DNA of 64,000 nt from Octopus sinensis (taxonomy: Eukaryota), in contig NC_043025.1 of assembly GCF_006345805.1 (NCBI RefSeq), positions 6,262,001-6,326,000 on the forward strand, written 5' to 3'. Position numbers and translations under genes: made by a program. Positions 1-56,665 of the stretch are shown here, one piece after another. How positions within the stretch are numbered: the first letter of the stretch is position 1; the number at the start of each line of letters is the position of its first letter. The notes beneath the pieces are model-generated. The model was not told where the DNA came from. It saw only the letters and a list, made by a program, of their open reading frames with translations, and did no database searches.

Positions 1-726
1 AACCTCAGAGATAACATTCCTTCGGTGCGCCAAGGGGCCGCGCAGGCGCTCTGCAACGTGGTCAAAGCGTACGGCGACGAGTGTCGCCACATGGTTGTGA
101 GCACGATCAAAGAAGGCCTGACTGGTATCGAACAGCAGGCGGCCACCGCCGAAAAGTATAGCAACCTGGACAAAGGCCTAGCCACCTACGGTGTAGCCAA
201 ACAGCTGAGGGACAACGATATGGAACTACACACCGACAAACAGATGTATTCGTGCGGGTCGCTGGCTCCGAAAATGGGGCGCGGCGGTGGATGCATGGAT
301 CACAAATTTCGCAAACCCGCAGAACCCTGGGAATATACCGACGGTTGCATCAACCTGGTCGCCGAGTTGGCTTCTCTGCCGCCCATGTCATCGACAGTTA
401 CCCAGCTGCTGCCCTTCGTCGCCAATGCGGCCAGTTTTCGCCACTACACCCAGCATCTTTACCTCCTGGAGACTGTATGCAAGAGGTTACCAGCCCTGGC
501 CTACGGGATAGGGAAGAGGAACTTCAAGAGCCAACTGGAGACCTTCTTTGACTGTGTTTTCTATGCGCTAACCTGTGATAGCCCCCTGACTTCGAGTGCG
601 GCCAGCCAGTGTTTGAACGCTCTCGGTAGTTTCCTAGGACCCAGCATTTTGCGTGGACGTGTCGAGATCTACAATCCGAAATACCTGGAAATGTTGGATG
701 CTAACCAGTACATTGCTCCTTTATAG
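1..726 (+). CDS. 3' coding end (terminal exon or part of it) of an uncharacterised HEAT/ARM-like alpha-helical protein; 5'-partial
   Basis: Frame is open from base 1 (NLRDNIPSVRQGAAQALCNVVKAYG...) to TAG 724-726, so the GTG start in the ORF track is not the real start. GC-rich relative to the flanks, non-repetitive protein-like composition. HEAT-like SVRQGAAQAL and TSSAASQCLNAL helices; AATAAA at 771-776. Confidence 0.8.
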   Translation, partial: NLRDNIPSVRQGAAQALCNVVKAYGDECRHMVVSTIKEGLTGIEQQAATAEKYSNLDKGLATYGVAKQLRDNDMELHTDKQMYSCGSLAPKMGRGGGCMDHKFRKPAEPWEYTDGCINLVAELASLPPMSSTVTQLLPFVANAASFRHYTQHLYLLETVCKRLPALAYGIGKRNFKSQLETFFDCVFYALTCDSPLTSSAASQCLNALGSFLGPSILRGRVEIYNPKYLEMLDANQYIAPL

Positions 727-10325: not shown

Positions 10326-11202
10326 GCATTCCTTTCCTTCTTGGGACACAAAACTCTACTTGTGAAGACCTGTTGAGGCAAGTGAAGATCCAAAATCAAA
10401 ATCGAAATCGATCAACATCAATGGAATTTGTAGCTATGATACCAGTGCCGGTGGCACATAAGAGAACCATCCGAACGTGGCCATAGCCAGCGCTGCCCTG
10501 ACTGGCCTCCGTGCTGGTGGCACGTAAAAAGCACCATCCGATCGTGGCCGTTTGCCAGCCTCGTCTGGCATGTAAAAAGCACCCACTACACTCACGGAGT
10601 GGTTGGCGTTAAGAAGGGCATCCAGCTGTAGAAACACTGCCAGATCAGACTGGAGCCTGGTGTAGCCTCCTGGCTTCCCAGACCCCAGTTGAACCGTCCA
10701 AGCCATGCCAGCATGGAAAGCGGACGCTAAATGATGATGATGAGTGAAGCCATGCCAAGTCAGATTGGAACCTGGTGAAGCTCTGCAGCTTACCAGTTTC
10801 GGTCCAACTGTCCAACCGATGCCAGTATGGAATGCAGATACTCAATGATGATGATGATGACAGGTACAAGAGGAATAAGATACAAACAAACGGACAGCGT
10901 GAGTGATTACAACAGACAAGCAAAAATTTGAAGGGTAATGGGCAAAATTTAAACACAAGGCTTCAGGAGTGGCTGTGTGGTAAGTAGCTTGCTTACCAAC
11001 CACATGGATCTGGGTTCAGTCACCTTGGGCAAGTGTCTTCTACTATATGTATATATATATATGTATGTATATATATATATATGTATATATATGTATGTAT
11101 ATATATATGTATATATATATGTGTATATATATGTGTATATATATGTATATGTGTATATATATGTATATATGTATATATATATGTTTGTATATATATATAT
11201 GC

Positions 11203-11259
<57 letters not shown>

Positions 11260-11262
11260 AGG

Positions 11263-11595
11263 AGACTCCCCTTCAGTCATGAATGACCATGGAATTGCAC
11301 CTAGAAAGTTACCCTCCTAGGCACAAGTCCGGGCAAGGTTGTTTTTATGAAAGACCAGCAGTCACCCATGCATACCGGCCTCCCGTCTCCGATGTTGTCC
11401 AAGGGAAAGGCAAAGGGGCCGATACAGCTTGTCACCGGTGACGTCGCAACTCATTTCTACAGCTGAGTGAACTGGAGCAACGTGAAATAAAGTGTCTTGC
11501 TCAAGAACACAACACGCAGCCCGGGTCGGGAATTGAACTCACAACCTCACGAACGTAAGCTCAACGCTCTAACCACTGAGCCATGCGCCTTCACA
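11263..11595 (-). mobile_element. tRNA-derived SINE (family 5)
   Basis: Second copy at ~40626-40985; tRNA-like head (gtgaaggcgcatggctcagtggttagagcg...gagttcaattccc) on the minus strand. Confidence 0.75.
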
Positions 11596-16170: not shown

Positions 16171-16827
16171 TTACTTCTTCTTCTTGGACGCCTGGATTTC
16201 CTCCAATTGTCCGTGTAACTCGCGCAGCTGTCTGTCCGGGATGTAACGGTTCGCGTCGTCGTCGGCGGTGTGGTGCCGTACCCTCAGGGTGACCCCTTCG
16301 GGCAGGTGACACGTGAAGAGCGAGATGAGCGGCGGCAGGGCGGTGTTGGTCAAATCCTGGAGCAGGACGTTCCGTTCGTACACCTGCAGCTCGTAGGTGT
16401 TGTCGGTCACGGTCGATTGGGGCCGATACGTGGAGACGTGGAGTGATTTGGCCGGCATGGCGAAGGCCTCGCAGTTGTGGCCCAGGTTATCACACATCTT
16501 ATGCACGTAGCATGCAAACTTCTCCAGCACCACGAAATCGTAACCCTTCATCTCGATGCACAGTGCTTCGTAAGGCTCTATTTCTGGTGGGAGGCCGACA
16601 TCGGTCGGCTCCCAGCGGATGGGGTCCCGACGCGGGGTCAAAGTCGCGGCATTCCGTGTCCCGCTGATCGAAGATGGCGATTCATTTCCTGTGGAAGCAG
16701 ACGTAAGAGAAGATGAACAAGACACAGAAGAAGCAATAACGGACTTCTGCTGCCTCAATAAACCTCCAAGGATATCCCTGTGTGATCCGAATCTCCGGAG
16801 GAGATTCGATGCGACCGGAAGAAGCAT
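16171..16827 (-). CDS. MRPL48: Mitochondrial ribosomal protein L48 (mL48), single coding exon, 218 aa
   Basis: YDFVVLEKFACYVHKMCDNL..EAFAMPAK, YERNVLL, LPEGVTLRVRHHT and RYIPDRQLREL align with recalled human MRPL48 (YAQYVHNLCNSL..ESYAMPTK, LPEGVRLSVKEHT, RFKARPELEEL). R/S/L-rich N-terminus fits a mitochondrial presequence. Confidence 0.9.
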   Translation of the reverse strand: MLLPVASNLLRRFGSHRDILGGLLRQQKSVIASSVSCSSSLTSASTGNESPSSISGTRNAATLTPRRDPIRWEPTDVGLPPEIEPYEALCIEMKGYDFVVLEKFACYVHKMCDNLGHNCEAFAMPAKSLHVSTYRPQSTVTDNTYELQVYERNVLLQDLTNTALPPLISLFTCHLPEGVTLRVRHHTADDDANRYIPDRQLRELHGQLEEIQASKKKK

Positions 16828-24142: not shown

Positions 24143-24348
24143 TTAGTTAACAAGTTGGTCCTCATAGTCTGTATATTTGTTACTTTTGCCAAACACTCTG
24201 TCTGCAGGATATTTCTTTGCGTTCTTCTGGAATTTACGCAGGGCAGCACTTGGAAGGTCAACCCTACACCGGTGCGCCAACCAAATCAGATATATTAAGA
24301 CATCACTCATTTCCTCACCTACATGTTCCTTTTCACATTCAGAAAATT
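24143..24348 (-). CDS. DCTPP1: DUF4817-like HTH / dCTP pyrophosphatase 1, copy A, exon 4 of 4
   Basis: Acceptor ttttttccag|AA at 24348; (E)FSECEKEHVGEEMSDVLIYLIWLAHRCRVDLPSAALRKFQKNAKKYP...QLVN*; EEMSD and K..N...YP motifs of DCTPP1. Join 32255-31975, 27879-27769, 26370-26336, 24348-24143 = 633 nt, 210 aa. Confidence 0.92.
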
Positions 24349-26335: not shown

Positions 26336-26370
26336 CTGGAAGTCCTTGTTTCACTTCACCCTTCCACTGA
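26336..26370 (-). CDS. DCTPP1: DCTPP1 copy A, exon 3 (35 nt)
   Basis: ctgttttcag|TCAGTGGAAGGGTGAAGTGAAACAAGGACTTCCAG|gtagg gives (F)QWKGEVKQGLP(E), containing the conserved FQW; identical to the copy B exon. Confidence 0.92.
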
Positions 26371-27768
26371 CTGAAAACAGGAGAAAATAGACATGAAAAC
26401 ATGTGTGTACACACACACACACACACACACATATATAACAATAGATAGGCAGAGAGATAGATACATATACACAATCACAAATAATGCTGCTGTGACAAAT
26501 TTTCATCTCTCTGGCATTCATTGTATTTTTAGAAGAGCAAGTCTATAAAGGATGTTATCTCTGGACAAAAATTACAGCAACTGGCCTATCAACTGTGTAT
26601 ACATTAAGTAAAAAACACTGTTTTCGAATGTGGCCATTGCCAGTACCGCCAAACCGGCCCTCATGCCGGTGGCACTTTAAAAGCACCCACTACACTCTCG
26701 GAGTGGTTGGCGTTAGGAAGGGCATTCAGCTGTAGAAACTCTGCCAGAACAAGATTGAAGCCTGGTGCAGCCATCTGGTTCGCCATTCCTCAGTCAAATC
26801 GTCCAACCCATGCTAGCATGGAAAGAGGACGTTAGACGATGGTGATGGTGATTAGTCATTGTGCCCTAAGTTCCGGTGGACTTGAGATGAATAGTGGAGT
26901 AGTTTCCCCCGTGGTCTTCTCTAGGCAGGTAGGATTTGAACACAGGATGTGGAGAACTGAAAGATATAGCATAAACCACCTCTGTTCGCGGGCCAATGGC
27001 CCTACCACTCTCCCACAAGCAGAGCAACATAGAATGAAATATTTTGCTCAAGAACACACAACGAACACCCAGTCCTGGAATTGAACCCACAATCTTGTGA
27101 CTGTAAATGCAATCATCCTAACCACTAGGCCACATGCATTCACATTAACCATTTTGTTACTGTATTTATTTTGAGGTGTTCTGTGTTTCTTTCAATTACT
27201 TTAAATATAACAAAGAATTTAGTAAAATAACTTGGTTATCATTAAGCTAGTGTTAGGAACATAAATTGTGACTAAGGCTTGATTTTAATTCAAAACTTTT
27301 GAAAACAAGACATTTGTACAACAGAGCCAGAGGTGGTTTCAACCAGGTTGGCATCGAAAGGGTTAAAAATATCATGGTGACTTTAACCCTTTTGTTACCA
27401 TATTTCTGTTGAGATGTTCTGTGTTTCTTTCAATTATTTTAAATATAACAAAAGAATTTAGTAAAATAACTTGGTTATCATTAAGCTGGTGTTAAGAACA
27501 TAAATTGTGACTAAGGTTTGGTGGAAGATTTTAATTGAAACCTTAAGAAAACAAGACATTTGTACAACAGAGCCAGAGCCGGTTTGGTAACAAAAGGGTT
27601 AAGTCACATGACTTACATAGAGACTATGAACTGGGTCTTTTTACTCTGACCAGAACCGTGATGACCCCCTTCCAATTTATGTCACCATGGAAATAAAGAT
27701 GGTACAGACACAGCATAAGAACCTACAGTTTTGACTTTGAAATCTTGGATAAATGTAAACCAACTTAC

Positions 27769-27879
27769 AATATTTCAGCGAGTTCTCCGACTTCTCCAAC
27801 CAGTGCCAACAAGATATTTCGTGGGGTTTGATACTGGTCCCGGTTCCGTGCCAGGCAGAAGTCCTCCTGTTTCTGGCGA
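27769..27879 (-). CDS. DCTPP1: DCTPP1 copy A, exon 2 (111 nt)
   Basis: ttttccag|T CGC...ATA TT|gtaag; RQKQEDFCLARNRDQYQTPRNILLALVGEVGELAEI(F) matches DCTPP1 PRNLLLALVGEVGELAELF. Confidence 0.92.
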
Positions 27880-31974: not shown

Positions 31975-32255
31975 ATATCTTCCAAAGTGGTTTGTAGACT
32001 AAATTTAAACTCAGGTTCGTCCTCAAGTCGCGTGATCTCACCGTTCTGCCGTGGTTGTTTTGGCGGTGATGTTCCCACATCGCCGTTTGAGTGGATATTT
32101 TCCGTAGCCTGGAAATTCTTTTCCCAAGTTAAAAGCATCTGATCTGTTGGAGGTTCTTCTGCGTAGTTCTCCGTCCATTTAACTCGCACAGCCTCCGTTG
32201 ATTTCAGCTCTGCCAGCCACAAAACCGCCTGCAACTTCTGGTTGAATGCTGCCAT
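31975..32255 (-). CDS. DCTPP1: DCTPP1 copy A, exon 1 (281 nt): DUF4817-like HTH, linker and start of the pyrophosphatase domain
   Basis: ATG 32255; ends FKFSLQTTLED-AT|gtaagt. The phase-2 join with exon 2 gives TLEDIR, as in human FSFSPEPTLEDIR. Confidence 0.9.
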
Positions 32256-34800: not shown

Positions 34801-35084
34801 ATGGCAGCATTCGACCAGAAGTTGCAGGCGGTTTTGTGGCTGGCAGAGCTGAAATCAACGGAGGCTGTGAGAGTTAAATGGACGGAGAAGTACGCAGAAG
34901 AACCGCCAACAGATCAGATGCTTTTAACGTGGAAAAAGAATTTCCAGGCTACGGAAAATATCCACTCGAACGGAGATGTGGGAACATCCCCACCAAAAAG
35001 ACCGCGACAAGACTTTGAGAAGACGACGAACCTTGAGGACGAAGCTGGGTTTAAATTCAGTCTGGAAACCACTTTGGAAGATAT
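34801..35084 (+). CDS. DCTPP1: DUF4817-like HTH / dCTP pyrophosphatase 1, copy B, exon 1 of 4 (284 nt)
   Basis: MAAFDQKLQAVLWLAELKS...FKFSLETTLED-AT|gtgagt. Join 34801-35084, 54563-54673, 55341-55375, 56454-56665 = 642 nt, 213 aa (an in-frame ATG also at 34798). Confidence 0.9.
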
Positions 35085-36693
35085 GTGAGTATTGAAGCTT
35101 TTATACTGTTCTGTTCGGTTCAGTAACTGGGTGGTGGCCATGCTGGGGCACTGCCTTCAAAGAGACTAACACCGGTTTAGCAAGCTGTGTTGAACAAGCA
35201 CAAAACACGTTCCCTCATATATATAACGGATATAAATATATATACATGTGTGTATATATATGTATATATATATATGTGTGCATATATACTCTTTACTCTT
35301 TTACTTGTTTCAGTCATTTGGCTGCGGCCATGCTGGAGCACCGCCTTTAGTCGAGCAAATCGACCCCGGGACTTATTCTTTTGTAAGCCCAGTACTTATT
35401 CTAACAGTCTCTTTTTGCCAAACCGCTAAGTGACGGGGACGTAAACACACCAGCATCGATTGTCAAGCAATGCTACGGGGACAAACACAGACACACACAC
35501 TCATACATATATACGACGGGCTTCTTTCAGTTTCCGTCTACCAAATCCGCTCTCAAGTCATTGGTCGGCCCGGGGCTATAGTAGAAAACACTTGCCCAAG
35601 GTGTCACACGGAACCATGTGGTTGGTAAACAAGCTACTTACCACACAGCCACGCCTGCGCCTATGTATATATATATATATATTATATTATATTTATATTA
35701 TTGGTTTATGTCTATCACTGTTTGAGTTGCCTAATAGTGGTTTTATCTCTAATTTATATATATATATATATGTGTGTGTGTGTGGTGGAGGTAAAGAATA
35801 CGCACACCACCCGTTTTCGGCGTAACCCTAACCCCAAGGCCATCTCATTCCTTTGAAAGGCTCTCTGCAACTAATCCCTTCAATCAAAATTCATAAGCTA
35901 TACACCTTTTATTCGTAGCTATATTTTACTTTATTCTATCTAAAGTTCAATATTTCATGTTATTTTAGGATAAGAATGTCTTTAAAAGTACAAGTTATGA
36001 ATTTATTTAGGTTAATATAGGGCTGGAACTATCGGGCGATCTTTCGTCTCTAGTAGACCTTTCCGTCGATTTCCGTAAAAAACTTCTTTTTTTTTTACAT
36101 ATGGGCTTGCGGGAACTTTTGAAGTATTATACATACATATATACACATACACCGAGTAAAAAATTTCAGTTATCTCTTTCTTTCACACATTACTCTGTCT
36201 CTTCACACACACTAACAGAAGCACTTCACTTACACAACATACTGTCTGTCTCCCACACCCCATCAAACACACACACACACACATGTACATCAATGCTTCA
36301 CATGCACGGTAACTTCAAAAGAACTTCCCTCGTCATACAATCGCTTTCTCTTAGTCTCTTGGTAAGGAAGGCCAACATTTAATAGGGTTGAATAATTTAT
36401 TTGATGGACTCACAAATTTGCTAATCCGCTCAATGCCAGCGAACAACCAAACATAAACATTTTAATTAGAATTACAATCTGTAAATGGAATTAACTGATT
36501 ATACGTATGACAGCCGTTAAGACGATTGCAACGAATACAAAAAAAGTGCGGGAGACCGGGTCGGGCCCTCCTCCGTTTTCTGCAGAAAGAATGCATTTCC
36601 GATAGCTTACCGGGTCAACTTAGACGATTGCACCCGAAAAAACCTTGGAGACAAAAATTATTTAGTACCGAAATCGAGTCTTGTGTGAAACTA

Positions 36694-36727
36694 ACTATCT
36701 ATCTATCTGTGTGTGTCTATCTGTCTG

Positions 36728-36800
<73 letters not shown>

Positions 36801-36819
36801 ATCTATCTATCTGTGTCTG

Positions 36820-36881
<62 letters not shown>

Positions 36882-36888
36882 GTGTCTG

Positions 36889-36942
<54 letters not shown>

Positions 36943-36949
36943 GTGTCTG

Positions 36950-36999
<50 letters not shown>

Positions 37000-37006
37000 G
37001 TGTCTG

Positions 37007-37056
<50 letters not shown>

Positions 37057-37075
37057 CTATCTATCTATCTATCTA

Positions 37076-37107
<32 letters not shown>

Positions 37108-37110
37108 TCT

Positions 37111-37145
<35 letters not shown>

Positions 37146-37152
37146 GTGTCTG

Positions 37153-37214
<62 letters not shown>

Positions 37215-37221
37215 GTGTCTG

Positions 37222-37282
<61 letters not shown>

Positions 37283-37289
37283 GTGTCTG

Positions 37290-37321
<32 letters not shown>

Positions 37322-37348
37322 ATCTATCTATCTATCTATCTGTGTCTG

Positions 37349-37414
<66 letters not shown>

Positions 37415-37421
37415 GTGTCTG

Positions 37422-37460
<39 letters not shown>

Positions 37461-37467
37461 GTGTCTG

Positions 37468-37520
<53 letters not shown>

Positions 37521-37537
37521 CTATCTATCTGTGTCTG

Positions 37538-37580
<43 letters not shown>

Positions 37581-37598
37581 GTGTCTGTCTATCTATCT

Positions 37599-37649
<51 letters not shown>

Positions 37650-37656
37650 GTGTCTG

Positions 37657-37715
<59 letters not shown>

Positions 37716-37890
37716 GTGTCTGTCTATCTATTTATCTGTGTGTGTGTGTGTCTATCTGTGTGTGTGTGTCTATCTGTCTGTCTATCTATCTGTGTGTGTG
37801 TCTATCTGTCTATCTATCTGTGTGTGTGTCTCTCTCTGTCTGTCTATCTATCTGTCTGTCTGTCTATTTGTGTGTGAGTCTATCTTTCTG
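36694..37890. repeat. ~1.2-kb (TATC)n / GATA microsatellite with recurrent tgtgtctgtc and attatc variants
   Basis: Direct reading; source of the 400+ aa YLSI pseudo-ORFs. Confidence 0.95.
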
Positions 37891-38874
37891 TCTATATACA
37901 CTCATACATAAACATATAACCTATATATACAAACAAACACACCCATACACAGACTTTTATATAGTTTCCGTCTATCTGCTCTAGCCAAAGCATTGGTCAG
38001 GGCTTGGGGGGTCTATAGTAGAAAATAACCGGAGAACTTTAAATCTTTGTGCTAAAACTGTTTTGAAACTATTTGTGGGGAAGAAAGAAAAAAAAGAATC
38101 AAAGACGTTCTAGCTGTGACCTTCTCTGTTAAGTTCTTAGTCAGCCCCGTAATTAAAGCACTGAGGTCGTGACCATCGTGTCAATATGTGTTCATCATCA
38201 TCATCATTTAACGTCCGCTTCCCATGCTGGCATGGGTTGGACGATTCAACTGGGGTCTGGGAAGCCAGGAGGCTGCACCAGGCCCAGTCTGATCTGGCAG
38301 TGTTTCTACAGCTGGATGCCCTTCCTAATGCCAACAACTCCATGAGTATAGTGGGTGCTTTTTACGTGCCACCAGCACAGGTGCCAGACGGGGCTGGCAG
38401 ACGGCCACGATCGGATGGTGCTTTTTACGTGCAACCAGCACGGGGACCAGACGAAGCTGGCAACGGCCACGGTCGGATGGTGTTGTATATTTATAACTAC
38501 TTTATGTATCCGTTCTTTTTCATGACATTAAGTAAGGTGTTAATTGAGGGCACTTTAGTTGTTATATGTAAGAAGAGTTAGTTTGCCATATTTTTTCTTT
38601 CAATTTTTGAGTTTTTCTTACATTTCATATTTTCCCGCGTGAATTACATGACAGTAAATCCCAGCACTTGAAATACCGAAACGAAAACGATAGTGGCCAC
38701 TGCTGTTGGAATTTAAATGGATTAATGCAGGGGTCGGAGAACTTTTTTTAACCAATTACCCCAAAATATATTTATTTACGGTGATGTTACCCCCTTCATT
38801 TGAAAGGAAGAAAATCATAGATTCTTTGAATTCGAAAGGTTCATTGACTCTATTTATATGGAGAATACAATCTA

Positions 38875-39250
38875 TCATCATCATCATCATCATCATCATC
38901 GTTTAACGTCCGCTTTCCATGCTAGCATGGGTTGAACGGTTCAACTGGGGTCTGGCAAGCCCGAAGGCTACATCAGGCCAGTCAGATCTGGCAGTGTTTC
39001 TACAGCTGGATGCCCTTCCTAACGCCAACCACTCCGAGAGTGTAGTGGGTGATTTTATGTGCCACCGACACAGGTGCCAGACGAGGCTGGCTGACGGCCA
39101 CACTCGGATGGTGTTTTTTATGTGCCACCGACACAGGTGCCAGACGAGGCTGGCAGACGGCCACGCTCGGATGGTGTTTTTTATGTGCCACCGACACAGG
39201 TGCCAGACGAGGCTGGCGAACGGCTACGATCGGATGTTGTTTGTTACGTG
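38875..39250 (-). mobile_element. SINE-like family 3 with (GAT)n tail and internal ~58-bp subrepeats
   Basis: catcatcgtttaacgtccgctttccatgctagcatgggt...ctggatgcccttcctaacgccaacc; further copies at ~10490-10742, 20820-21310, 23580-23850, 25055-25245, 26640-26845, 38190-38485, 47750-48225. The tail resembles the RTE tails in this window. Confidence 0.75.
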
Positions 39251-39516
39251 ATATATAAAGATGAGAATGCGTATCTGTGTGTGTGAATCCCTAAAACTCG
39301 AGAATTACCCAACTGATTTCATTCACATGCCTTACGGTCTGTGCAACGTCATAGGCCCCAAAAATTTTCAACGTTGTACCTAATGCGAGCCCACAGTAAT
39401 CTCTTACACTAATTCGGGATTACATGTCAAATGTGAAACAATAATATCTCTCTATTGCAATGTGAGATACTTTCACTATTATAGTGAAATTATTACCTCA
39501 GATATATATATATATA

Positions 39517-39907
39517 GGCGCAGGAGTGGCTGTGTGGTAAGTAGCTTGCTAACCAACCACATGGTTCCAGGTTCAGTCCCACTGCGTGGCACCTTGGGCA
39601 AGTGTCTTCTGCTATAGCCCCGGGCCGACCAATGCCTTGTGAGTGGATTTGGTAGACGGAAACTGAAAGAAGCCTGTCGTATATGTGTATGTATATATAT
39701 GTATGTGTGTGTCTGTGTTTGTCCCCCTAGTATTGCTTGACAACCGATGCTGGTGTGTTTATGTCCCCGTTACTTAGCGGTTCGGCGAAAGAGACCGATA
39801 GAATAAGTACTGGGCTTACAAAGAATAAGCCCCGGGGTCGATTTGCTCGACTAAAGGCGGTGCTCCAGCATGGCCGCAGTCCAATGACTGAAACAAGTAA
39901 AAGAGTA
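39517..39907 (+). mobile_element. tRNA-derived CORE-type SINE (family 1), representative full-length copy; roughly 19 copies or fragments in the window
   Basis: A/B-box-like head ggcgcaggagtggctgtgtggtaag...gggttcagtccc, CORE-like accttgggcaagtgtctt, internal microsatellite, (TAAAAGAG)n tail. Others at 12268, 21715, 22228, 24413, 25849, 27945, 29726, 30155, 31524, 33103, 35248, 54845, 55960. Confidence 0.85.
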
Positions 39908-41359
39908 TATGCATACATACATATTTGGCATAAACACTCCACCACTATTACTAATAACTGTTGGGAACCCTTTCAGACCTGTCCTACATTCGAACCGGAA
40001 TCTCAAAAACATTGTCCCCTTACATCTCATTCTCATTTCATTCCCACCTCAGGGAAATAAAACTTAGTTTTCACTACGGGACAATGGAAGATGGTAACAT
40101 ATTTACCACATGACCCCAAAAGGATGAAAGGCGAAGTCAACCTCGGCGGAATTTGAACTCAGAACGTAGTGGCAGATGAAATAGCGCTGGGCGAAATGCT
40201 TAGCGGTATTTCGTCTGCCGCTACGTTCTGAGTTCAAATTCCGCCGAGGTCGACTTTGCCTTTCATCCTTTCGGGGTCGATAAATTAAGTACCAGTTACG
40301 CACTGGGGTCGATATAATCAACTTAATCTGTTTGTCTGTCCTTGTTTGTCCTCTCTGTGTTTAGCCCCCTGTGGGTAGTAAAGAAATAGATATTTACCAC
40401 ATGCTACATTCTCAAGTGAAGTATATTGTCATCCACCTTCACCTCTAACCTTCCTAGCATACGGAGAGTTCAAACAACCCCATATCACTATAGCGCCACT
40501 GATACCTTCATCCTTCTAGCTGTCTGCTTTCTTATAAATGCGACAGAATTCATTTCCCGCCAAATAACATCCTGAATGCAATTCATAATCACTCTGTCCT
40601 TTTCTCTTGTCTTCTCTTTCACAACATTGCTCTATCAAAGCAATCGGGACCCCCTTCAATCATGACACTGACCATGGGATTGCACCTAGAAACTTAGCCT
40701 CCCAGGCACAAGTCAGAGCAAGGTGGTTTATGGAAGACCAGCAGTCGCCCATGCATACCGGCCTCCCCTCTCCACACCACCGATGTTATCTAAGGGAAAA
40801 GCAAAGGGGCCGATACAGCTTGGCACCAGTGACATTGCAACTCACTTTTACAGATGAGTGAACTGGAGCAACGTGAAATAAAGTGTCTTGCTCAAGAACA
40901 CAACACGCAGCCCGGTCCAGGATTCGAACTCACAACCTCACGATCATAAGCTCAACGCTCTAACCACTGAGCCATGTGCCTTCACATCAAAGCAATACTG
41001 ATCAACTAAAGCACATTCATTCATTTTCCTGATTTCGGTACGTAACCTTTCTCCTTTGTAAATTGTGACAATATGAAACATTTCACTGCTATTTCTACCA
41101 CACACTGCTACCACGTAATGGCTTCTCGCGAATACCTGTTCAGTGGTAGCATGACGTGTTACAAATACCAACCAAGTCGGTCAATGTTTGCAAGTACACC
41201 TGCATATCAACTCCAAACACTTTTCTTTCTTTTCCAGCGGATTCATATGTTTTCCATCACGGACATTCCAATTATGCAAAAATAATACCTTTCATTTTCA
41301 ATTCCCTGTCCCTACTCCTAATTTTTACATTTTCACTTCTTTCAAAATAATTCCATACT

Positions 41360-42195
41360 TCTTCCCTAATGCAGGTGCCAAGAAATCTTTTACATTTCTT
41401 CAGTCAATTTCTTACATTTTCAATTCTTTTCAATTTCCTACATTAAGAATAGGGGAACAGGGTACTTGATACCAAGCAAAAACACTCCCACTTCTTTCAG
41501 TTTTCCTAATGCGGGTGCCAAGCAATCTTTTACATTTCTTCAGGCAATTTCTTACATTAAGAATAGGGGAACAGGGTACTTGATACCGAGCGAAAACACT
41601 CCCACTTCTTTCAGTTTTCCTAATGCGGGTGCCAAGCAATCTTTTACATTTCTTCAGGCAATTTCTTACATTAAGAATAGGGAAACAGGGTACTTGATAC
41701 CGAGCGAAAACACTCCCACTTCTTTCAGTTTTCCTAATGCGGGTGCCAAGCAATCTTTTACATTTCTTCAGGCAATTTCTTACATTAAGAATAGGGGAAC
41801 AGGGTACTTGATACCGAGCGAAAACACTCCCACTTCTTTCAGTTTTCCTAATGCGGGTGCCAAGCAATCTTTTACATTTCTTCAGGCAATTTCTTACATT
41901 AAGAATAGGGGAACAGGGTACTTGATACCGAGCGAAAACACTCCCACTTCTTTCAGTTTTCCTAATGCGGGTGCCAAGCAATCTTTTACATTTCTTCAGG
42001 CAATTTCTTACATTAAGAATAGGGGAACAGGGTACTTGATACCGAGCAAAAACACTCCCACTTCTTTCAGTTTTCCTAATGCGGGTGCCAAGCAATCTTT
42101 TACATTTCTTCAGGCAATTTCTTACATTAAGAATAGGGGAACAGGGTACTTGATACCGAGCAAAAACACTCTCACTTCTTTCAGTTTTCCTTACT
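41360..42195. repeat. 114-bp minisatellite, about 7 units
   Basis: agcaatc at 41521 and 41635 gives the period; the 38-aa repeat in the ORF track agrees. Confidence 0.92.
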
Positions 42196-43049
42196 GAAAT
42201 GCATGCCAATGCATGCATTAAAATTTCATGTGTCTGTTTTTGCTTCTTCTTTAATGTGGACCTGCAGACCTACCAACTTACCTTTAACCATTCCTACACT
42301 CACATGCGCATCAACGGCAATTTCTGCCCCACCAGCACCCCTAAACAAACCTAAGCAACTCATCCACTTGCTCTTTCATTAACCCTTTTGTTACCTAACC
42401 CTAACCCTGGCTGAAACAGGCCCTGGCTCTGTAGTACAAATGTCTTGTTTTCATAAGTTTTGAATTAAAATCTTCCACCAAACCTTAGTCACAATTAATG
42501 CTCCTAACACTAGCTGAATGATAACTTAGTTATTTTACTAAATTCTTTGCTATATTTAAAATTAATTGAAAGAAACACAGAGCATCTCAACAGAAATACG
42601 GTAACAAAAGGGTTCAAGTCACCATGATATTTTTAACCCTTTTGATACCAACTTGGTTGAAACCACCCCTGGCTCTGTAGTACAAATGTCTTGTTTTCAT
42701 AAGTTTTGAATTAAAATCTTCAACCAAACCTTAGTCACAATTTATGTTCCTAACACTAGCTGAATGATAACTAAGTTATTTTACTAAATTCTTTATTATC
42801 TTTAAAGTAATTGAAAGAAACACAGAGCATCTCAACAGAAATACAGTAACAAAAGGGTTAACCCTTTCTCTATCCAATCTATACGACAGAGCAGCCATAC
42901 ATTGACAAACAACACCCAAAATTCATGTCCACACAAACGACAACATTCCCAACACAATTCATAAACAATTTCTCCTTTGCTCTTACCATTTCCCTCGCCT
43001 TGCCTTTCACAGTGCGTCCATGCTGCCAACAAAGCACGCGGAGTTCTGT

Positions 43050-43640
43050 TCTTGATTTGACGGTCATTCGGAATGCTCACAGCAGCCATATTCCTACCGC
43101 TCTATGTCACACTGGTGAGACCCATATTGGAGTACGGGATTCAAGCCTCTTCTCCTTATCTCCTCAAAGACATACAGCATCTCGAAAGAGTCCAGAAGCT
43201 GGCTACCCGCATGGTTCTTGGTCTCAAGAATTTGTCTGATGAAGAAAGGCTGAAGACGCTCGACCTTTATTCTCTAGAAAAACGCCGCTGCCGTGGTGAT
43301 CTCATTCTTGGTCACAACATCATAAGTGGAAAGTGTAACCTTTCGAAAGAGCTGTTCTTCACTCCTGCTCCAGAGCGTCGGCTGTGGGGTCATTCCGAAA
43401 AGCTCTACCTGCGACGATTTCATCTCAATCGAAGGAGAGGAGCTTTCTCCGTCCGGGTTGCGGATCCGTGGAACAAGCTGCCAGACGAGATAGTGAAGAT
43501 GCCGACGACCGCTTTGTTCAAAGCCTCCCTGGACCTCAAGTGGCCTGAACTCTTTACATGAACACCCTCCCTGTACATAACTCCATGTCCCCCTACATGG
43601 CCTTGCTTTTTGAGCCAAAAAATTAACTAACTAACTAACA
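43050..43640 (+). mobile_element. CR1/L2-clade LINE, 5'-truncated ORF2 C-terminus with (AACT)n tail
   Basis: LYVTLVRPILEYGIQASSPYLLKDIQHLERVQKLATRMV...YSLEKRRCRGDLI...FSVRVADPWNKLP, typical of the CR1 post-RT region; tail aattaactaactaactaac. Confidence 0.9.
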
Positions 43641-43835
43641 ACTGTTTCCATTCTCATTTTCATGTCCTAACACTAACATCATCTGATTTCACACATTTAC
43701 CGTTCTATTACCTTTTCATTATTACCACAGCACTTGCAAGTTTTCAACTGCTCTACAGTTGCATGCTAACCCTTCAAATAATATTTCATACTCCACAGTG
43801 TATCTCACTGCATTTCATCATGCTTCTTTTAGATC

Positions 43836-46800
43836 ATGCCCCGAAGGAAGGCTTCTTCAATTGGACGCAAAACTGCAAGATCCTCAGCAAGGAGGGCCAA
43901 TGAATCGTCAGTGGAAACTGACATTAGACAATCCCAAAATGCTGAACATACAGCCACTTCAAGAGCACTCCAAACAGATCACTAGGGTACACTTCGACGA
44001 ACTGTTGATGTTGCCTCAACTGCTGCTGCATGAGCTGCAGAGAAGAAAAACGAATGCGCTCAGGAATGCAGCCAGCCTGGCTGCTGCGCGAGCTTCCCAC
44101 ACCTTACAACAGAGGTATACCATTTCTGCAGACTTCCATTCAACAAAGAGCTCATAGACGAGGATTTTCAACGCCACGATGGTTATTAAAGGCTTTCCAC
44201 TGCAACCCTAACCTTCGTTATGATTGCCACCCAGATATGAACATTGGAGATATGTCCATCATTTGCTCTTTCTGCAAAGCTAAGAAGTGGTCAAGAGAAA
44301 CTCCTGCGATGTGTTGTGCTAATGGAAAAGTTAACCCCACTCCACTGCAGGATCCACCACAGCTCTTAAAGTCACTCTACGCTGGCACAACTACAGAGTC
44401 GAAACATTTCCTGAATAACATCTGGAAGTACAATTGTGCATTCCATATGACATCTTTCGGCGCTAATGTTGTTCAAGAAAGCGGGTTTATGCCAACTTTC
44501 AAAGTGCAGGGACAGATTTACCATTGGATAGGATCGCTCCAACCTGCTGAAAATCAAGATCCTCAATTTTTTTAACTGTACTTTGTAGGTAATTTACATG
44601 AACAGGCCACCCGACGAAACCCCATTTCCATTGGTACTAACTTTCACTTGATAATGCAACTGCACAACTGCAAGACCTTTTGCACCAGGAAAACAGCTAT
44701 GTATGCAGCTTCAAGTATACCTTGGAAACAGAAGATTCATTAAATTTTAATGTTGTCATTGATGCCCAGAAAAGACCATCCAGGGAACATGCAGGCCGTT
44801 ACAATGCACCCACATGCAATGAAATGTCTGTACCCCTTCACGGTGAACAGCACAATCCCAGAGACATTGTCCTCAGCCGACGTGACACCACCCTCCAACG
44901 AAATAGTGAAACACACCGATTATACGATTCACTCCAATACCCACTTCTGTTTGTTAACGGTGAGGATGGCTACCACATCGATATAGCACTGCAAGATCCC
45001 CCAATTTGTAATGAACATCTCAACAAGCCAATGTCCTGCATGGACTTCTACTCATACTTCCACTTCGCCAATGACACCCTGCCATTCAACAGCTTGCAGT
45101 GCACCTGGAAAACGGTCAAAGAGTGTACTTCACCGATGCTAATGCTTCTCTGTTGTCAGAGGAACCAAGGGATAGCACACTCACTGCATTCTTCAAGCTT
45201 TGTCAAGTGTATCCATTCGCTCAAACTTTGCTGTATCCACAGATTCCATCGTACTACACTTGGAATGGAAAAAAAAATGGGCCCCACGGAAAGCAGGTCA
45301 AAATGTTCATGGATACCCTGGCATTAAGTTTCACACTTGCCTTGGGCGAGTATACACAGTGCATCCCACTCAACAAGAGTGCTTCTACCTCCGTCTACTA
45401 CTGCATGAGGTCAGAGCGCCAACGTCTTTCCAGGCCCTAAAAACCGTTCTTGGACATGTCTGCACAACATACAGAGAAGCCTGCTATCGACAAGGTCTGT
45501 TAGAAGATGGTGCACAATGGGATGCAACTTTGGGAGAGGCTGCTTTATCAGAATCACCTCAAAGTCTCAGGGTCACTATTTGCAGTATTACTACAAACAT
45601 GTGAGCTGTATGATTCTGCCACTCTATGGCTCAAATACAGAGACAACCCGGCTGAAGACTTTCGGTGCCAAGCTCAACTGCTCTATCCTGACATGGAGGG
45701 TATCAGCAATGAAGTCTATAACAAAACTCTCATTGACATTGAAGGCAGAATTACTAAACTGGGTGGAAATGAATTGTCCCCGTATGGCCTGCCGCAAACA
45801 TTCAGGTCAGGGTCAAATAGCCTTCCCACTGCTGTCATTCGTGAAACAACCTACGACACTCAAGCGCTTTCAAAGTTCATTGTTGAAAATGAGCCTAAAT
45901 TACTTCTGGACCAGCTGCAGGCCTACAGAACTATTCTTAACAGTGCATGCCAATGCGAGGGACAAATCTTCTTCCTCGATGCTCCTGGAGGGACAGGAAA
46001 AGCATTTATTACAAAGCTTCTCCTTGCAGAAGTTAGGTAGCATCAGGACGTTGCAGTAGCTGTAGCATCCTCTGGCATTGCAGCTACTTTGTTACCCGGT
46101 GGCAGGACAGCACACTCAACGTTTAAACTTCCTCTCAATTTAGCAGCATCCGAGATGCCTTCATGCAACATCAACAGAAGCTCAGATCAGGGGCAAGTAC
46201 TTAAAATGTGTCATCTAATTGTCTGGGATGAGTGCACCATGGCTCACAAGGGAGCTTTGGAAACATTAGATAGAGCCCTGAAAGACATCCGAGACTGTCA
46301 GGCTCCAATGGGAGGTGTAACGCTTCTGTTGTCAGGTGATTTCAGGTAAACTTTCCCTGTCGTTCCGAAAGGCACTAGAGCTGATGAAGTTCAAGCATGC
46401 CTAAAGTTCTCTACCCTGTGGCATCATATTACGATCCTCAGTCCTACCACTAATATGAGAGCTTAGCTACATGGCAACCAAATGTCCATAAAGGTTGCAC
46501 AGGACATTTTGACACTTGGTGAAGGCAGGATGCCTCTCGATGCTGCAGGACAAATGGAAGTGTAGCCATTTTCCTTTGTTGTTAATTCCGTAGATGAGCT
46601 CAAACAAAAAGTCTTTCCCAACTTCACAGAAAACTACTAAAATCACAATTGGCTGTGCAAAAGAGCAATATTACGAGGGGCGTTCAATAAGTAATGCCCC
46701 TGACCCACTTCCCATAGGAGTAGAGCAACGAAACTTGGCACAGTTATTAGTCTTTTTCTACATAGGAACCACCCAGAGTTACGCATTTCTCCCATCGTTT

Positions 46801-47641
46801 GCTGCGGCTCTGGAGACCGTTTTTGTAGAAGAACCCAGCTTGGTCCTCCAACCTGAACGTGACTTCAGAAATCAAGGCTGCATCATCTGGGAAACGCTTT
46901 CCTTTCAAAAACAACTTCATGATTGGGAAGAGGTAAAAATCAGAGGGTGCAAGGGGAGGAGTTCATAGCTGCACGCCTGTGCTTCTGATCTGGCGACAAG
47001 CGAGTTGTGGACCGGAGCGTTGTCCTGCAGGAGGAGGATGCCTTTGCTGATCTTGCCCTGCCTCTTGATTTTGATAACTTCTCTTAATTTCCTCAAAACG
47101 TCGCTGTTAACAAAATTAATCAACAGCTAATGCATTCTCTTCCCGGCACTATACACACTTACAAGTCTGTTGATACAATTCCCGATATAAATGAAATTGT
47201 GAACTATCCTCTTGAATTTCTCAATTCATTGGAGCCTCCTGAACTACCTCCGCACATATTAGCACTTAAAGTTGGAACTCCTGTAATGCTACTCCGCAAT
47301 CTGGAACCACCAAGACTTTGCAATGGAACACGACTGGTGATAAAGAAAACGATGTCACACGTTATCGAGGCAATAATTTTTTCTGGATGTGGAAAAGGTG
47401 ATGACTTCTTTATTCCAAGAATTCCTCTCGCTCCATCAGACGACTGCAATTCCTCCTTCGTGTCAGCTTTGCCATGTCCATTAACAAATCTCAGTGTCAA
47501 ACCCTCTCAGTAGCTGGTCTTCTCTTGGAAGAGCCCTGCTTCTCGCATGGACAACTGTATGTTGGGTGCTCAAGAATGGAAAGCGAAAGAAGCCTCTTTG
47601 TATATGCTCCACAAGGAACATTGTTTACGATGAGGTGTTAT
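43836..47641 (+). mobile_element. Degenerate Helitron RepHel pseudogene (PIF1-like helicase present, Rep core deleted)
   Basis: MPRRKASSIGRKT, CSFCKAKKWSRETPAMCCANGKV, GQIYHWIGSL, GRYNAPT, YDSLQYPLLF, VHLENGQRVYF, FLDAPGGTGK (Walker A), GRTAHSTFKLP, IVWDEC (Walker B), LLLSGDFR, MLLRNL..LCNGTRL, SINKSQ.QTL, HGQLYVGCSR; many stops and frameshifts. Confidence 0.93.
46674..47100 (-). mobile_element. Mariner 3' fragment nested in the Helitron helicase region
   Basis: TIR ta|cgaggggcgttcaataagtaatgc; minus-strand KGILLLQDNAPVH...PSDFYLFP...KRWEKCVTLGGSYVEKD*. The Helitron frame WLCKRAIL resumes as AVNKINQQL after it. Confidence 0.88.
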
Positions 47642-48239
47642 AATCACAACAGCCAGGAGGTATGTACATGGTCCCCTTCTTTTTACCAAACTTCATGTAC
47701 TTTCATGCATTTATATTGATATACATATGTGTGTGTGTGTGTATCATGAGAGCCTCCTCTGGCCCCTGTGCCGGTGGCACGTAAAAAACACCCACTACAC
47801 TCACAAAGTGGTTGGCATTAGGAAGGGCATCCAGCTGTAGAAACATTGCCAGATCAGACCAGACTGGAGCCTGGTGCATCCTCCTGGCTTCCCAGACCCC
47901 GGTCGAACTGTCCAACCCATGCTAGCATGGAAAACGGATGTTAAATGATGGTGATGGCTTTTTTTTTTTTTTGCCGGTGACACGTAAAAGCACCATCCGT
48001 TCGTGGCCGTTTGCCAGCTTTGTCTGACACCTGTGCGGGTGACACGTAAAAAGCACCCACTACACTCACGGAGTGGTTGGCGTTAGAAAGGGCATCCAGC
48101 CGTAGAAACACTGCCAGATCTGACTGGGCCTGATGAAGCCTTCCAGCTTCACAGACCCCAGTTGAACCGTCCAATCCATGCTAGCATGGAGAACGGACGC
48201 TAAATGATGATGATGATGATGATGATATATATATATATA

Positions 48240-48486
48240 TACTTTATTTAAAGCAGCAGAAAATTCAACAAAACCTGTTACTCTGAGTTTCCCGTTGCCG
48301 TTCATCGGACAGTTTTTCAAGCAAAAGAAGCCGCTTCTAGCAAAAACTGTCCGACGAACGGCAACGGGAAACTCAGAGTAACAGGTTTTGTTGAATTTTC
48401 TGCTGCTTTAAATAAAGCATATTACTCTACCACTGGTATTTGAGTACTCTTTTTTCCACCTTGTTTCACATTTATGTGTTTACTCC

Positions 48487-48523
<37 letters not shown>

Positions 48524-48856
48524 TATTCTAGCAAAAACTGTCCGACGAACCGGAACGTGAAACTCAGAGTAACAGGTTTTGTTGAATTTTTTGCTGCTTT
48601 AAATAAAGCATATTACTCTACCACGGGTATTTGAGTACTCTTTTTTCCACCTTGTTTCACATTTATGTGTTTACTCCGGTATATATATATATATATATAT
48701 TCTATTCTAGCAAAAACTGTCCGACGAACGGAAACGTGAAACTCAGAGTAACAGGTTTTGTTGAATTTTCTGCTGCTTTAAATAAAGTATATTGCTCTAC
48801 CACTGGTATTTGAGTACTCTTTCTTCCACCTTGTTTCACATTTATGTGTTTACTCC

Positions 48857-48860: not shown

Positions 48861-48900
<40 letters not shown>

Positions 48901-54562: not shown

Positions 54563-54673
54563 TCGCCAGAAACAGGAAGACTTCTGCACGGAACGAAACT
54601 GGGCCCAGTATCACACACCACGAAATATCTTGTTGGCACTGGTTGGAGAAGTCGGAGAACTCGCTGAAATATT
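54563..54673 (+). CDS. DCTPP1: DCTPP1 copy B, exon 2 (111 nt)
   Basis: ttctttccag|T CGC...ATA TT|gtaag; RQKQEDFCTERNWAQYHTPRNILLALVGEVGELAEI(F), with the canonical ERxW..YH.PRN. Not shown in the ORF track. Confidence 0.93.
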
Positions 54674-55340: not shown

Positions 55341-55375
55341 TCAGTGGAAGGGTGAAGTGAAACAAGGACTTCCAG
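55341..55375 (+). CDS. DCTPP1: DCTPP1 copy B, exon 3 (35 nt)
   Basis: ctgttttcag|TCAGTGG...CTTCCAG|gtagg. Confidence 0.93.
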
Positions 55376-56453: not shown

Positions 56454-56665
56454 AATTTTCTGAACGTGAAAAGGAACATGTAGGTGAGGAAATGAGTGAT
56501 GTTTTAATATATTTGATTCGGTTAGCCGACCGATGTAGGGTTGACCTTCCAAGCGCTGCTCTGCGTAAATTCCAGAAGAACGCAAAGAAATATCCTGCAG
56601 ACAGAGTCTTTGGCAAAAGTAACAAATATACAGACTATACAGACCAACTTGTTAAAGAAATTTGA
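56454..56665 (+). CDS. DCTPP1: DCTPP1 copy B, exon 4 (212 nt)
   Basis: atttttatttcag|AA TTT TCT...; FSEREKEHVGEEMSDVLIYLIRLADRCRVDLPSAALRKFQKNAKKYPADRVFGKSNKYTDYTDQLVKEI*, TGA at 56663-56665. Confidence 0.93.

What the first reader, a model, noticed from the sequence alone, without database searches (positions are those of the whole stretch)
27769..27879. Copy A has a rewired nucleobase pocket but intact catalytic residues
Seen: B reads FCTERNWAQYHTPRN and A reads FCLARNRDQYQTPRN, five changes in nine codons while the rest of the exon is identical in protein. By alignment to recalled human DCTPP1 these include W47->R, H51->Q and E44->A. W47 and H51 line the base-binding site in DCTPP1/RS21-C6 structures (established). 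Metal ligands E63/E66/E95/D98, W73, Y102 and K121/N125/Y129 are retained in both. Inference: altered substrate specificity (a different modified dNTP), or a pseudoenzyme that modulates the oligomer.
Basis: partly seen in the sequence, partly recalled or inferred. Interest (0 to 1): 0.7.

Follow-up and report, generated by a model that had tools for sequence, protein, structure and literature searches.

The report
Octopus DCTPP1 paralog with altered base pocket
One of two head-to-head copies of the octopus nucleotide-cleaning enzyme DCTPP1 has replaced the near-invariant tryptophan and histidine that recognise cytosine but kept its catalytic residues, so it probably remains a working protein with a changed nucleotide preference.

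Summary
Window 27769-27879 (minus strand) is exactly exon 2 of copy A of a head-to-head DCTPP1 gene pair. The window is Octopus sinensis: A equals RefSeq XP_029652915.1 and B equals XP_029652914.1.

A reads FCLARNRDQYQTPRN and B reads FCTERNWAQYHTPRN. All metal and phosphate residues are intact in both copies.

- **What really changed in A.** Only W47R, H51Q and E44A are clearly derived in A. Asp48 in A matches the family consensus, so B's Ala48 is the unusual state. Position 43 is variable.
- **How unusual that is.** Trp47 is present in 321 of 326 sampled family domains and none has Arg. Published structures show Trp47 and Trp73' sandwiching cytosine, with His51 bonding to the base.
- **Why the rest of the exon is identical.** A recent A/B gene-conversion tract stops right at the pocket. 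This leaves an island of divergence: 9 differences in 40 nt, against 2 in 178 nt in the tract.
- **A second island.** Exon 4 carries R105W and D108H, shared with O. vulgaris and O. bimaculoides.
- **A is not decaying.** It has an intact ORF and GT-AG introns. dN/dS for exons 3-4 is about 0.06 between species.

Altered base specificity is the best reading. A pseudoenzyme subunit remains possible. Nothing biochemical was tested.

The parts
27769..27879 (-). Copy A exon 2 (the finding). It encodes A residues 95-130 plus split codons, covering helix alpha1, the base-pocket loop and the start of helix alpha2 with E63/E66/E69.
   Evidence: AG|TCGCCA ... AATATT|GTAAGT. The joined model is identical to XP_029652915.1.
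27825..27864 (-). Pocket island of divergence: 9 nucleotide differences from copy B in 40 nt (6 at nonsynonymous positions, 3 synonymous). It gives L103, A104 (E44A), R107 (W47R), D108 and Q111 (H51Q) in A numbering.
   Evidence: Conservation of these positions.
27646..27824 (-). Recent A/B gene-conversion tract: the 3' 56 nt of exon 2 plus about 122 nt of intron 2. A and B differ at 2 of 178 sites, while B differs from its O. bimaculoides ortholog at 19 of 178.
   Evidence: Fisher p = 1.5e-4.
31975..32255 (-). Copy A exon 1: start codon, an N-terminal three-helix extension and a linker.
   Evidence: AF2 pLDDT is 88-98 for residues 1-50.
26336..26370 (-). Copy A exon 3 (FQWKGEVKQGLP, contains W73). 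It is identical to the B exon.
24143..24348 (-). Copy A exon 4, carrying E95, D98, Y102, K121, N125, Y129 and the stop codon.
24269..24289 (-). Second island of divergence in A exon 4: 6 differences in 21 nt. It gives W165 (R105W) and H168 (D108H) plus 4 synonymous changes. The island is shared with the A orthologs of O. vulgaris and O. bimaculoides.
34801..35084 (+). Copy B exon 1, head-to-head with A exon 1. The two start codons are 2.5 kb apart.
54563..54673 (+). Copy B exon 2 with the ancestral pocket FCTERNWAQYHTPRN.
   Evidence: The same pocket is seen in O. bimaculoides B, and the same conserved residues in Argonauta.
55341..55375 (+). Copy B exon 3.
56454..56665 (+). Copy B exon 4 (IRLADRC, the ancestral state).

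Best explanation
Copy A is a real, intact, selectively maintained paralog of the all-alpha (MazG-like) dNTP pyrophosphatase DCTPP1. It arose by an inverted, head-to-head duplication in the octopus lineage. Copy B keeps the ancestral cytosine pocket.

On the A lineage the base-recognition elements were replaced. Trp47, one face of the aromatic sandwich, became Arg. His51, a hydrogen-bond selectivity filter, became Gln. Glu44 became Ala. A coupled pair at the end of helix alpha3 also changed (Arg105 to Trp, Asp108 to His). Every metal-, phosphate- and sugar-contacting residue stayed, as did Trp73.

A and B still exchange sequence by gene conversion. The A-specific residues survive as two short islands of high divergence, which is the pattern expected when conversions across functionally diverged sites are removed by selection.

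Most likely mechanism (inferred, not shown): A still hydrolyses nucleoside triphosphates but no longer prefers cytosine or 5-modified cytosine. It would act as a homotetramer, or in mixed tetramers with B, because each active site is built from several chains.
For: Shown:
- Both copies have complete 4-exon ORFs with GT-AG introns. A is 100% identical to RefSeq XP_029652915.1 and B equals XP_029652914.1.
- The same head-to-head layout is seen in independent assemblies of O. vulgaris and O. bimaculoides, so this is not an assembly artefact.
- B, O. bimaculoides B, Argonauta and the wider family carry E44/W47/H51/R105/D108, so A is the derived copy. The relative-rate count is 6 A-unique against 0 B-unique changes in 110 core residues, p = 0.014.
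- W47 is W in 321/326 domains and never Arg. Of 35 positions at least 90% conserved, A departs only at 47 and 51.
- Structural roles of W47, W73', H38 and H51 are stated in PMC13291643 and PMC13616921.
- The A pocket is unchanged in O. vulgaris, with 2 synonymous and 0 nonsynonymous differences in exon 2. IWLAH is shared with O. vulgaris and O. bimaculoides.
- A_sin against A_bim for exons 3-4 gives 13 synonymous and 4 nonsynonymous differences, omega 0.06, binomial p = 8e-7 against neutrality.
- Mosaic pattern: 9/40 differences in the pocket island against 2/178 in the adjoining tract (p = 4e-6). The tract is five-fold less diverged than the B orthologs (p = 1.5e-4).
- The AF2 model of A is confident in the core (pLDDT above 94). 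It superposes on human and mouse DCTPP1 at TM 0.92-0.95 and rmsd 1.3-1.9 A.
- Islands of divergence under gene conversion as a sign of selection: PMC3728101 and PMC3924837.
Against: - There are no expression or activity data.
- Neither A nor B protein was found in transcript-derived (Logan) assemblies, so transcription of A is unverified.
- Part of the low dN/dS of A may be borrowed from B through gene conversion. Paralog dS in exons 3-4 is 0.21, lower than ortholog dS of 0.38.
- A's exon 2 in O. bimaculoides lies in an assembly gap. The pocket changes are therefore documented only in the close pair O. sinensis and O. vulgaris.
- A scan statistic for clustering within exons 2-4 alone is not significant (p = 0.088).
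- The test that conserved-site hits fall on base contacts is post hoc.
- Losing one face of the aromatic sandwich could simply cripple nucleotide binding.
Confidence: 0.55

Rival explanations
1. Copy A is a pseudoenzyme or regulatory subunit. Its own base pocket no longer binds a nucleotide productively. A is kept because it co-assembles with B, donating Trp73 and phosphate/metal residues to neighbouring composite sites and so tuning the activity or specificity of the tetramer.
For: - Each DCTPP1 active site is formed by residues of up to three chains. W47, F50 and H51 come from one chain and W73 from another (PMC13616921).
- A retains W73 and all catalytic residues.
- Outside the two islands the A and B core domains are nearly identical, so interfaces should be compatible.
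- In other taxa, tandem two-domain DCTPP1-like proteins have one domain lacking W47 or H51 (for example P0127, P0129, P0134, P0137). This is a natural precedent for asymmetric pairs.
Against: - Strict retention of all metal ligands in A is not required for a purely structural subunit.
- R105W and D108H might alter an interface instead.
- No interaction data exist.
Confidence: 0.25
2. Neutral decay is masked by gene conversion. A lost its function when the pocket was hit. Its ORF and low dN/dS are maintained passively, because B repeatedly overwrites A. The two islands are simply stretches that conversion tracts have missed so far.
For: - Gene conversion between A and B is demonstrable.
- Paralog dS is below ortholog dS in exons 3-4.
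- Synonymous differences cluster together with the nonsynonymous ones in both islands.
- O. sinensis A carries a private R-to-C change at residue 147.
Against: - The exon 4 island is kept with no amino-acid change, and only one synonymous difference, in three species across dS of about 0.38.
- The pocket island shows only synonymous differences between O. sinensis and O. vulgaris.
- No stop, frameshift or splice defect is seen in any A exon examined.
- The only two hits at highly conserved positions are both base contacts, and none fall among about 30 catalytic or structural positions.
Confidence: 0.17
3. Assembly or haplotype artefact: A and B are alleles of one gene wrongly assembled as an inverted duplication.
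For: None beyond the high similarity of some segments.
Against: - The head-to-head pair appears in three independent assemblies: O. sinensis (the window), O. vulgaris L002 and O. bimaculoides L001/L003.
- The introns of A and B are largely unalignable and differ in size: 4.1 kb against 19.5 kb for intron 1.
Confidence: 0.01

Closest known systems
Mammalian DCTPP1 / RS21-C6 (PDB 2OIG, 6SQW/6SQY/6SQZ, 7MU5), all-alpha MazG-like dCTP pyrophosphatase
   Same: - Pfam MazG-like hit above threshold.
- 50-56% identity and TM 0.92-0.95 to the solved structures.
- E63/E66/E69/E95/D98 metal site, and Y102, K121, N125, Y129 and W73 all present.
- Copy B also has W47 and H51.
   Different: - Copy A has Arg47 and Gln51 in place of the Trp/His that hold cytosine, plus Ala44, Trp105 and His108.
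- Both octopus copies have Gln38, as most invertebrates do, where mammals have His38.
- Both carry a roughly 95-residue N-terminal extension, with a three-helix domain, that is absent from mammals.
Natural H51Q members of the DCTPP1 family (for example P0177, P0227, P0258, reading FxxERxWxQFQTPRN)
   Same: Gln at position 51 with otherwise canonical motifs.
   Different: They keep Trp47. None of the 326 sampled domains has Arg47, so the W47R/H51Q combination is so far unique to the octopus A copy.
Tandem two-domain MazG / DCTPP1-like proteins with one degenerate domain (for example P0127, P0129, P0134, P0137; E. coli MazG as the general precedent, from background knowledge)
   Same: Two related MazG-type modules, one with a canonical pocket and one with a diverged pocket.
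   Different: In octopus the two modules are separate genes, not one polypeptide. The diverged one keeps all catalytic residues.
Paralog pairs with islands of divergence maintained against gene conversion (for example GOT1 paralogs in Tigriopus, PMC3728101; theory reviewed in PMC3924837)
   Same: Low paralog divergence in converted tracts, next to short high-divergence islands that hold the paralog-specific residues.
   Different: Here the islands coincide with a structurally defined substrate-recognition site. Population data to prove selection are lacking.

Membership tests
MazG-like / DCTPP1 family (Pfam PF12643) | Significant match to the family profile above the curated threshold | tested here: met
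   A scores 41.8 bits and B 43.5 bits against a cut-off of 27.
MazG-like / DCTPP1 family (Pfam PF12643) | All-alpha four-helix MazG fold | tested here: met
   The AF2 model of A has core pLDDT above 94. TM is 0.92-0.95 and rmsd 1.3-1.9 A to 7MU5, 6SQW and 6SQY.
MazG-like / DCTPP1 family (Pfam PF12643) | Metal-binding acidic residues (E63, E66, E69, E95, D98) | tested here: met
   Present in both A and B.
dCTP-specific pyrophosphatase (functional DCTPP1) | Cytosine pocket: Trp47/Trp73' aromatic sandwich | tested here: not met
   A has Arg47, with Trp73 kept. B has both Trp residues. The role of these residues is taken from PMC13291643.
dCTP-specific pyrophosphatase (functional DCTPP1) | His51 hydrogen bond to the cytosine base (selectivity filter) | tested here: not met
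   A has Gln51 and B has His51. Gln51 occurs in 7 of 338 family domains.
dCTP-specific pyrophosphatase (functional DCTPP1) | Preferential hydrolysis of dCTP and 5-modified dCTP to the monophosphate plus pyrophosphate | not testable with these tools
   Requires an enzyme assay.
dCTP-specific pyrophosphatase (functional DCTPP1) | Homotetramer with composite active sites | not testable with these tools
   Only a monomer model was possible. The tetramer is known from PMC13616921.
DUF4817 helix-turn-helix domain (PF16087), for the N-terminal extension | Profile match above the curated threshold | tested here: inconclusive
   No hit for the octopus or Argonauta N-termini. There is a sub-threshold hit (14.4 bits against 22.6, E = 0.031) for the related P0131. 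UniRef names the O. bimaculoides protein P0128 a 'DUF4817 domain-containing protein'.

The most novel reading that the evidence does not exclude
Copy A is a neofunctionalised nucleotide-pool enzyme. Its Arg47/Gln51 pocket recognises a base other than cytosine, such as a purine, uracil/thymine or a damaged or modified nucleotide. Selection against A/B gene conversion is what keeps the two pocket islands distinct. It would be the first natural DCTPP1-family enzyme without the Trp47 stacking platform, and a natural experiment on how base specificity is encoded in the all-alpha NTPase fold.
Probability: 0.3. Interest if true: 0.6.

Novelty: new variant of a known kind. Interest (0 to 1): 0.45.

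Why it matters
DCTPP1 specificity is thought to rest on the Trp47/Trp73 sandwich and the His38/His51 filter. The enzyme is also a drug target, because it degrades cytidine-analogue drugs.

A naturally maintained paralog that swaps exactly these determinants, while keeping the catalytic core, gives a ready-made test of that model. It could also reveal a new house-cleaning activity.

The locus is a compact example of paralogs evolving in concert by gene conversion, except at the sites that define their difference. The scope is narrow, though. It concerns one lineage-specific gene pair, already annotated as 'dCTP pyrophosphatase 1-like', and has no functional data.

Tried and rejected
1. A search for A-type exon 2 in other species using the exon peptide failed. 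The 44-aa genomic-ORF query returned a single irrelevant spider fragment. No further orthologs of the pocket were obtained.
2. In O. bimaculoides, A exon 1 and exon 2 fall in runs of N (L001 6190-9501 and 10682-11196). The age of W47R and H51Q relative to that species could not be set.
3. A permutation scan for clustering of A/B differences within exons 2-4 alone gave p = 0.088 for the 40-nt window and 0.23 for the 21-nt window. These are not significant. The mosaic argument rests instead on the island-versus-tract and paralog-versus-ortholog contrasts.
4. The hypothesis that E44 and R105 form a coupled pair was not supported. Family covariation is not significant (p = 0.15). R105-D108 is strongly coupled (odds ratio 12, p = 4e-14).
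5. Contact-level geometry, such as the distance of residues 105 and 108 from the pocket loop, could not be computed because model coordinates are not exposed. Only the helix topology supports their lying at the same end of the bundle.
6. The Pfam scan of the N-terminal extension gave nothing above threshold.
7. The assembly-artefact reading was rejected.
8. No paper mentions dCTP pyrophosphatase together with octopus.

Full report
**What is at the coordinates.** The window is animal DNA, rich in SINEs and microsatellites. I built both gene models by hand.
- Copy A is on the minus strand: exons 32255-31975, 27879-27769, 26370-26336 and 24348-24143, giving 210 aa.
- Copy B is on the plus strand: exons 34801-35084, 54563-54673, 55341-55375 and 56454-56665, giving 213 aa.
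- All introns are GT-AG and both ORFs are complete.
- The finding's interval is exactly A exon 2.
- The protein search then showed the window is Octopus sinensis. My A model is 100% identical to XP_029652915.1, named 'dCTP pyrophosphatase 1-like'. B equals XP_029652914.1, which has one extra N-terminal Met.
- The two genes are head-to-head, with 2.5 kb between their start codons.

**The observation.** A reads FCLARNRDQYQTPRN and B reads FCTERNWAQYHTPRN. That is five amino-acid differences in nine codons, with nothing else different in the exon. An HMMER alignment to mouse RS21-C6/DCTPP1 (2a3q, 6sqw) fixes the numbering at T43L, E44A, W47R, A48D and H51Q, written in the B-to-A direction. E63, E66, E69, W73, E95, D98, Y102, K121, N125 and Y129 are present in both copies.

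**Which copy changed, and how unusual it is.** The O. bimaculoides B ortholog has the same pocket as B. The single Argonauta hians gene (FCVERNWNQYHSPRN) and Lottia, Crassostrea and other homologs keep its E44, W47 and H51.
- With Argonauta as outgroup, the 110-residue core has six A-unique replacements: E44A, W47R, H51Q, R87C, R105W and D108H. There are no B-unique ones (relative-rate p = 0.014).
- Positions 43 and 48 differ in all three sequences. A's Asp48 is the family consensus (Asp, Asn or Glu in most sequences), and B's Ala48 is rare. Position 43 is freely variable.
- Among 179 close homologs, Trp47 is invariant and His51 is 172/179.
- In a wider sample that adds 50%-identity representatives from a full HMMER scan (349 domains), Trp47 is 321/326 with no Arg. 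His51 is 312/338, with Gln the commonest alternative at 7. Ala44 occurs 28 times.
- Of the 35 core positions that are at least 90% conserved, A departs only at 47 and 51, and B departs at none.
- The meaningful content of the 'five changes' is therefore two A-derived hits at near-invariant sites, one at a moderately conserved site, and two at variable sites.

**What those residues do.** Structural papers on human and mouse DCTPP1 state that the cytosine ring is sandwiched between Trp47 and Trp73 of the adjacent monomer.
- One paper assigns the His38 and His51 hydrogen bonds to O2 and N3 of cytosine, and the other has His51 engaging the 4-amino group. Both histidines are described as selectivity filters.
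- Trp47 sits next to C5 of modified substrates.
- Phe41, Ile101, Tyr102 and Tyr129 line the sugar site.
- Each active site draws on several chains of the tetramer (PMC13291643; PMC13616921; docking in PMC4491611).
- I found no statement about Glu44.
- Both octopus copies have Gln38, as most invertebrates do.

**Why the rest of the exon is identical.** Aligning A and B with the O. vulgaris A locus (L002), the O. bimaculoides B locus (L003) and the O. bimaculoides A locus (L001) shows a mosaic.
- A and B differ at 9 of 40 nt in exon 2 positions 16-55 (window 27825-27864). Three of these are synonymous.
- They then differ at only 2 of 178 nt across the last 56 nt of the exon plus about 122 nt of intron 2.
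- In that same stretch, B differs from its O. bimaculoides ortholog at 19 of 178 sites (Fisher p = 1.5e-4). Island against tract gives p = 4e-6.
- The duplication predates the O. sinensis / O. bimaculoides split, as the next paragraph shows. Paralogs that are closer than orthologs therefore mean recent A/B gene conversion, and the tract ends at the edge of the pocket.
- Paralog dS in exons 3-4 (0.21) is likewise below ortholog dS (0.38).

**A second island.** In exon 4, A and B differ at 6 of 21 nt (window 24269-24289). The result is IWLAH in A against IRLAD in B (R105W and D108H), plus four synonymous changes.
- The O. bimaculoides A fragment (P0109, XP_014782924.1) and O. vulgaris A (P0186) share IWLAH.
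- Arg105 and Asp108 covary strongly across the family (odds ratio 12).
- In the AF2 model of A, helix alpha3 ends at residue 169 and alpha1 ends at 104, and the two helices run in the same direction. The second island therefore lies at the same end of the bundle as the 104-111 pocket loop. This is a topological inference, not a measured contact.

**Is A alive?**
- A has no stop, frameshift or splice defect in O. sinensis. The O. vulgaris exons, and the two O. bimaculoides exons that can be seen, also read through with intact splice sites.
- A_sin against A_bim for exons 3-4 gives 13 synonymous and 4 nonsynonymous differences. Omega is 0.06, with p = 8e-7 against neutrality.
- A_sin against A_vul for the core gives 4 synonymous and 1 nonsynonymous difference. 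In exon 2 there are 2 synonymous and 0 nonsynonymous.
- The model of A is confident and superposes on 7MU5 and 6SQW at TM 0.92-0.95.
- One caveat applies: conversion from the constrained B copy can lower A's apparent dN/dS.
- No transcript-derived copy of either A or B exists in the protein collection. Expression is therefore untested, and the absence is uninformative.

**Interpretation.** The best-supported reading is a maintained paralog whose base-recognition site has been remodelled while the phosphate and metal chemistry is kept. The paralog-specific residues persist as islands of divergence in a gene pair that otherwise evolves in concert. That pattern has been described as a signature of selection for a new function (PMC3728101, PMC3924837).
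- Arg can stack on bases and Gln can both donate and accept hydrogen bonds. A shift away from cytosine is therefore chemically plausible, but this is my inference.
- A pseudoenzyme subunit in mixed tetramers is the main rival. It has natural precedents in tandem two-domain relatives with one degenerate pocket.
- Passive decay masked by conversion is less likely but not excluded.

**Comparison and novelty.** By homology, fold and catalytic motif, A is a member of the MazG-like/DCTPP1 family. It fails the two features that define cytosine recognition, so the label 'dCTP pyrophosphatase' is unsupported for A. The gene is already annotated, and no paper mentions it. I rate it a new variant of a known kind and of moderate interest.

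Noticed in passing
window 34801-34965 (+) and 32091-32255 (-); also L004 10001-10147: Both octopus DCTPP1 copies begin with an extra N-terminal domain of about 55 residues, predicted as a confident three-helix bundle (pLDDT 88-98). It is also present in Argonauta hians (P0130) and in a 232-aa protein from Logan assemblies of unstated organism (P0131), and is absent from other molluscs and vertebrates. UniRef calls the O. bimaculoides protein 'DUF4817 domain-containing', but Pfam gives only a sub-threshold DUF4817 hit. A helix-turn-helix-like module fused to a nucleotide-pool enzyme is unexplained.
   Followed up: partly
window 35085-54562: Intron 1 of copy B is 19.5 kb in O. sinensis but only about 1.07 kb in O. 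bimaculoides (L003 6282-7346). It is filled with satellite arrays (about 36.7-37.9 kb; 41.43-42.19 kb with a 114-nt period; inverted arrays at 49.6-54.0 kb), Helitron/Pif1-like helicase ORFs (44030-46059) and a reverse-transcriptase fragment (43073-43561).
   Followed up: partly
L003 about 11020-11316 (O. bimaculoides B exon 4 region): In the O. bimaculoides assembly, the 5' half of B exon 4 is replaced by unrelated repeat-like sequence next to a run of N (10509-11019). That half encodes E95, D98 and Y102. The RefSeq models there (P0124, P0125) have no Pfam hit. Either the canonical copy is broken in that species or this is a scaffolding artefact.
   Followed up: partly
window 24335-24337 (-): O. 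sinensis A has Cys147 (TGT) where O. vulgaris A, O. bimaculoides A, B and Argonauta have Arg (CGT). This is a private CpG-type change in the alpha2-alpha3 loop.
   Followed up: partly
L002 20485-20690 versus protein P0186: The deposited O. vulgaris A protein (CAI9744393.1, 243 aa) leaves exon 4 after ...PSAAL and continues with unrelated sequence. The genomic exon 4 is nevertheless intact and reads through to a stop, as in O. sinensis. This is probably an annotation difference.
   Followed up: partly
window 16171-16827 (-): A single-exon 218-aa ORF lies downstream of copy A. It is syntenic with a Ribosomal_S10-domain gene in O. bimaculoides (L001 13789-14445) and is probably mitochondrial ribosomal protein S10.
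   Followed up: no
proteins P0123, P0126, P0127, P0129, P0134, P0137 (not in the window): Several animals and fungi encode tandem two-domain DCTPP1-like proteins. In some, one domain has lost Trp47 and/or His51, a recurrent asymmetric-pair theme parallel to the octopus A/B genes.
   Followed up: partly
window 25..726 (+): An ORF at the window edge encodes a 233-aa segment. It is probably a terminal exon of an unrelated neighbouring gene and was not examined.
   Followed up: no
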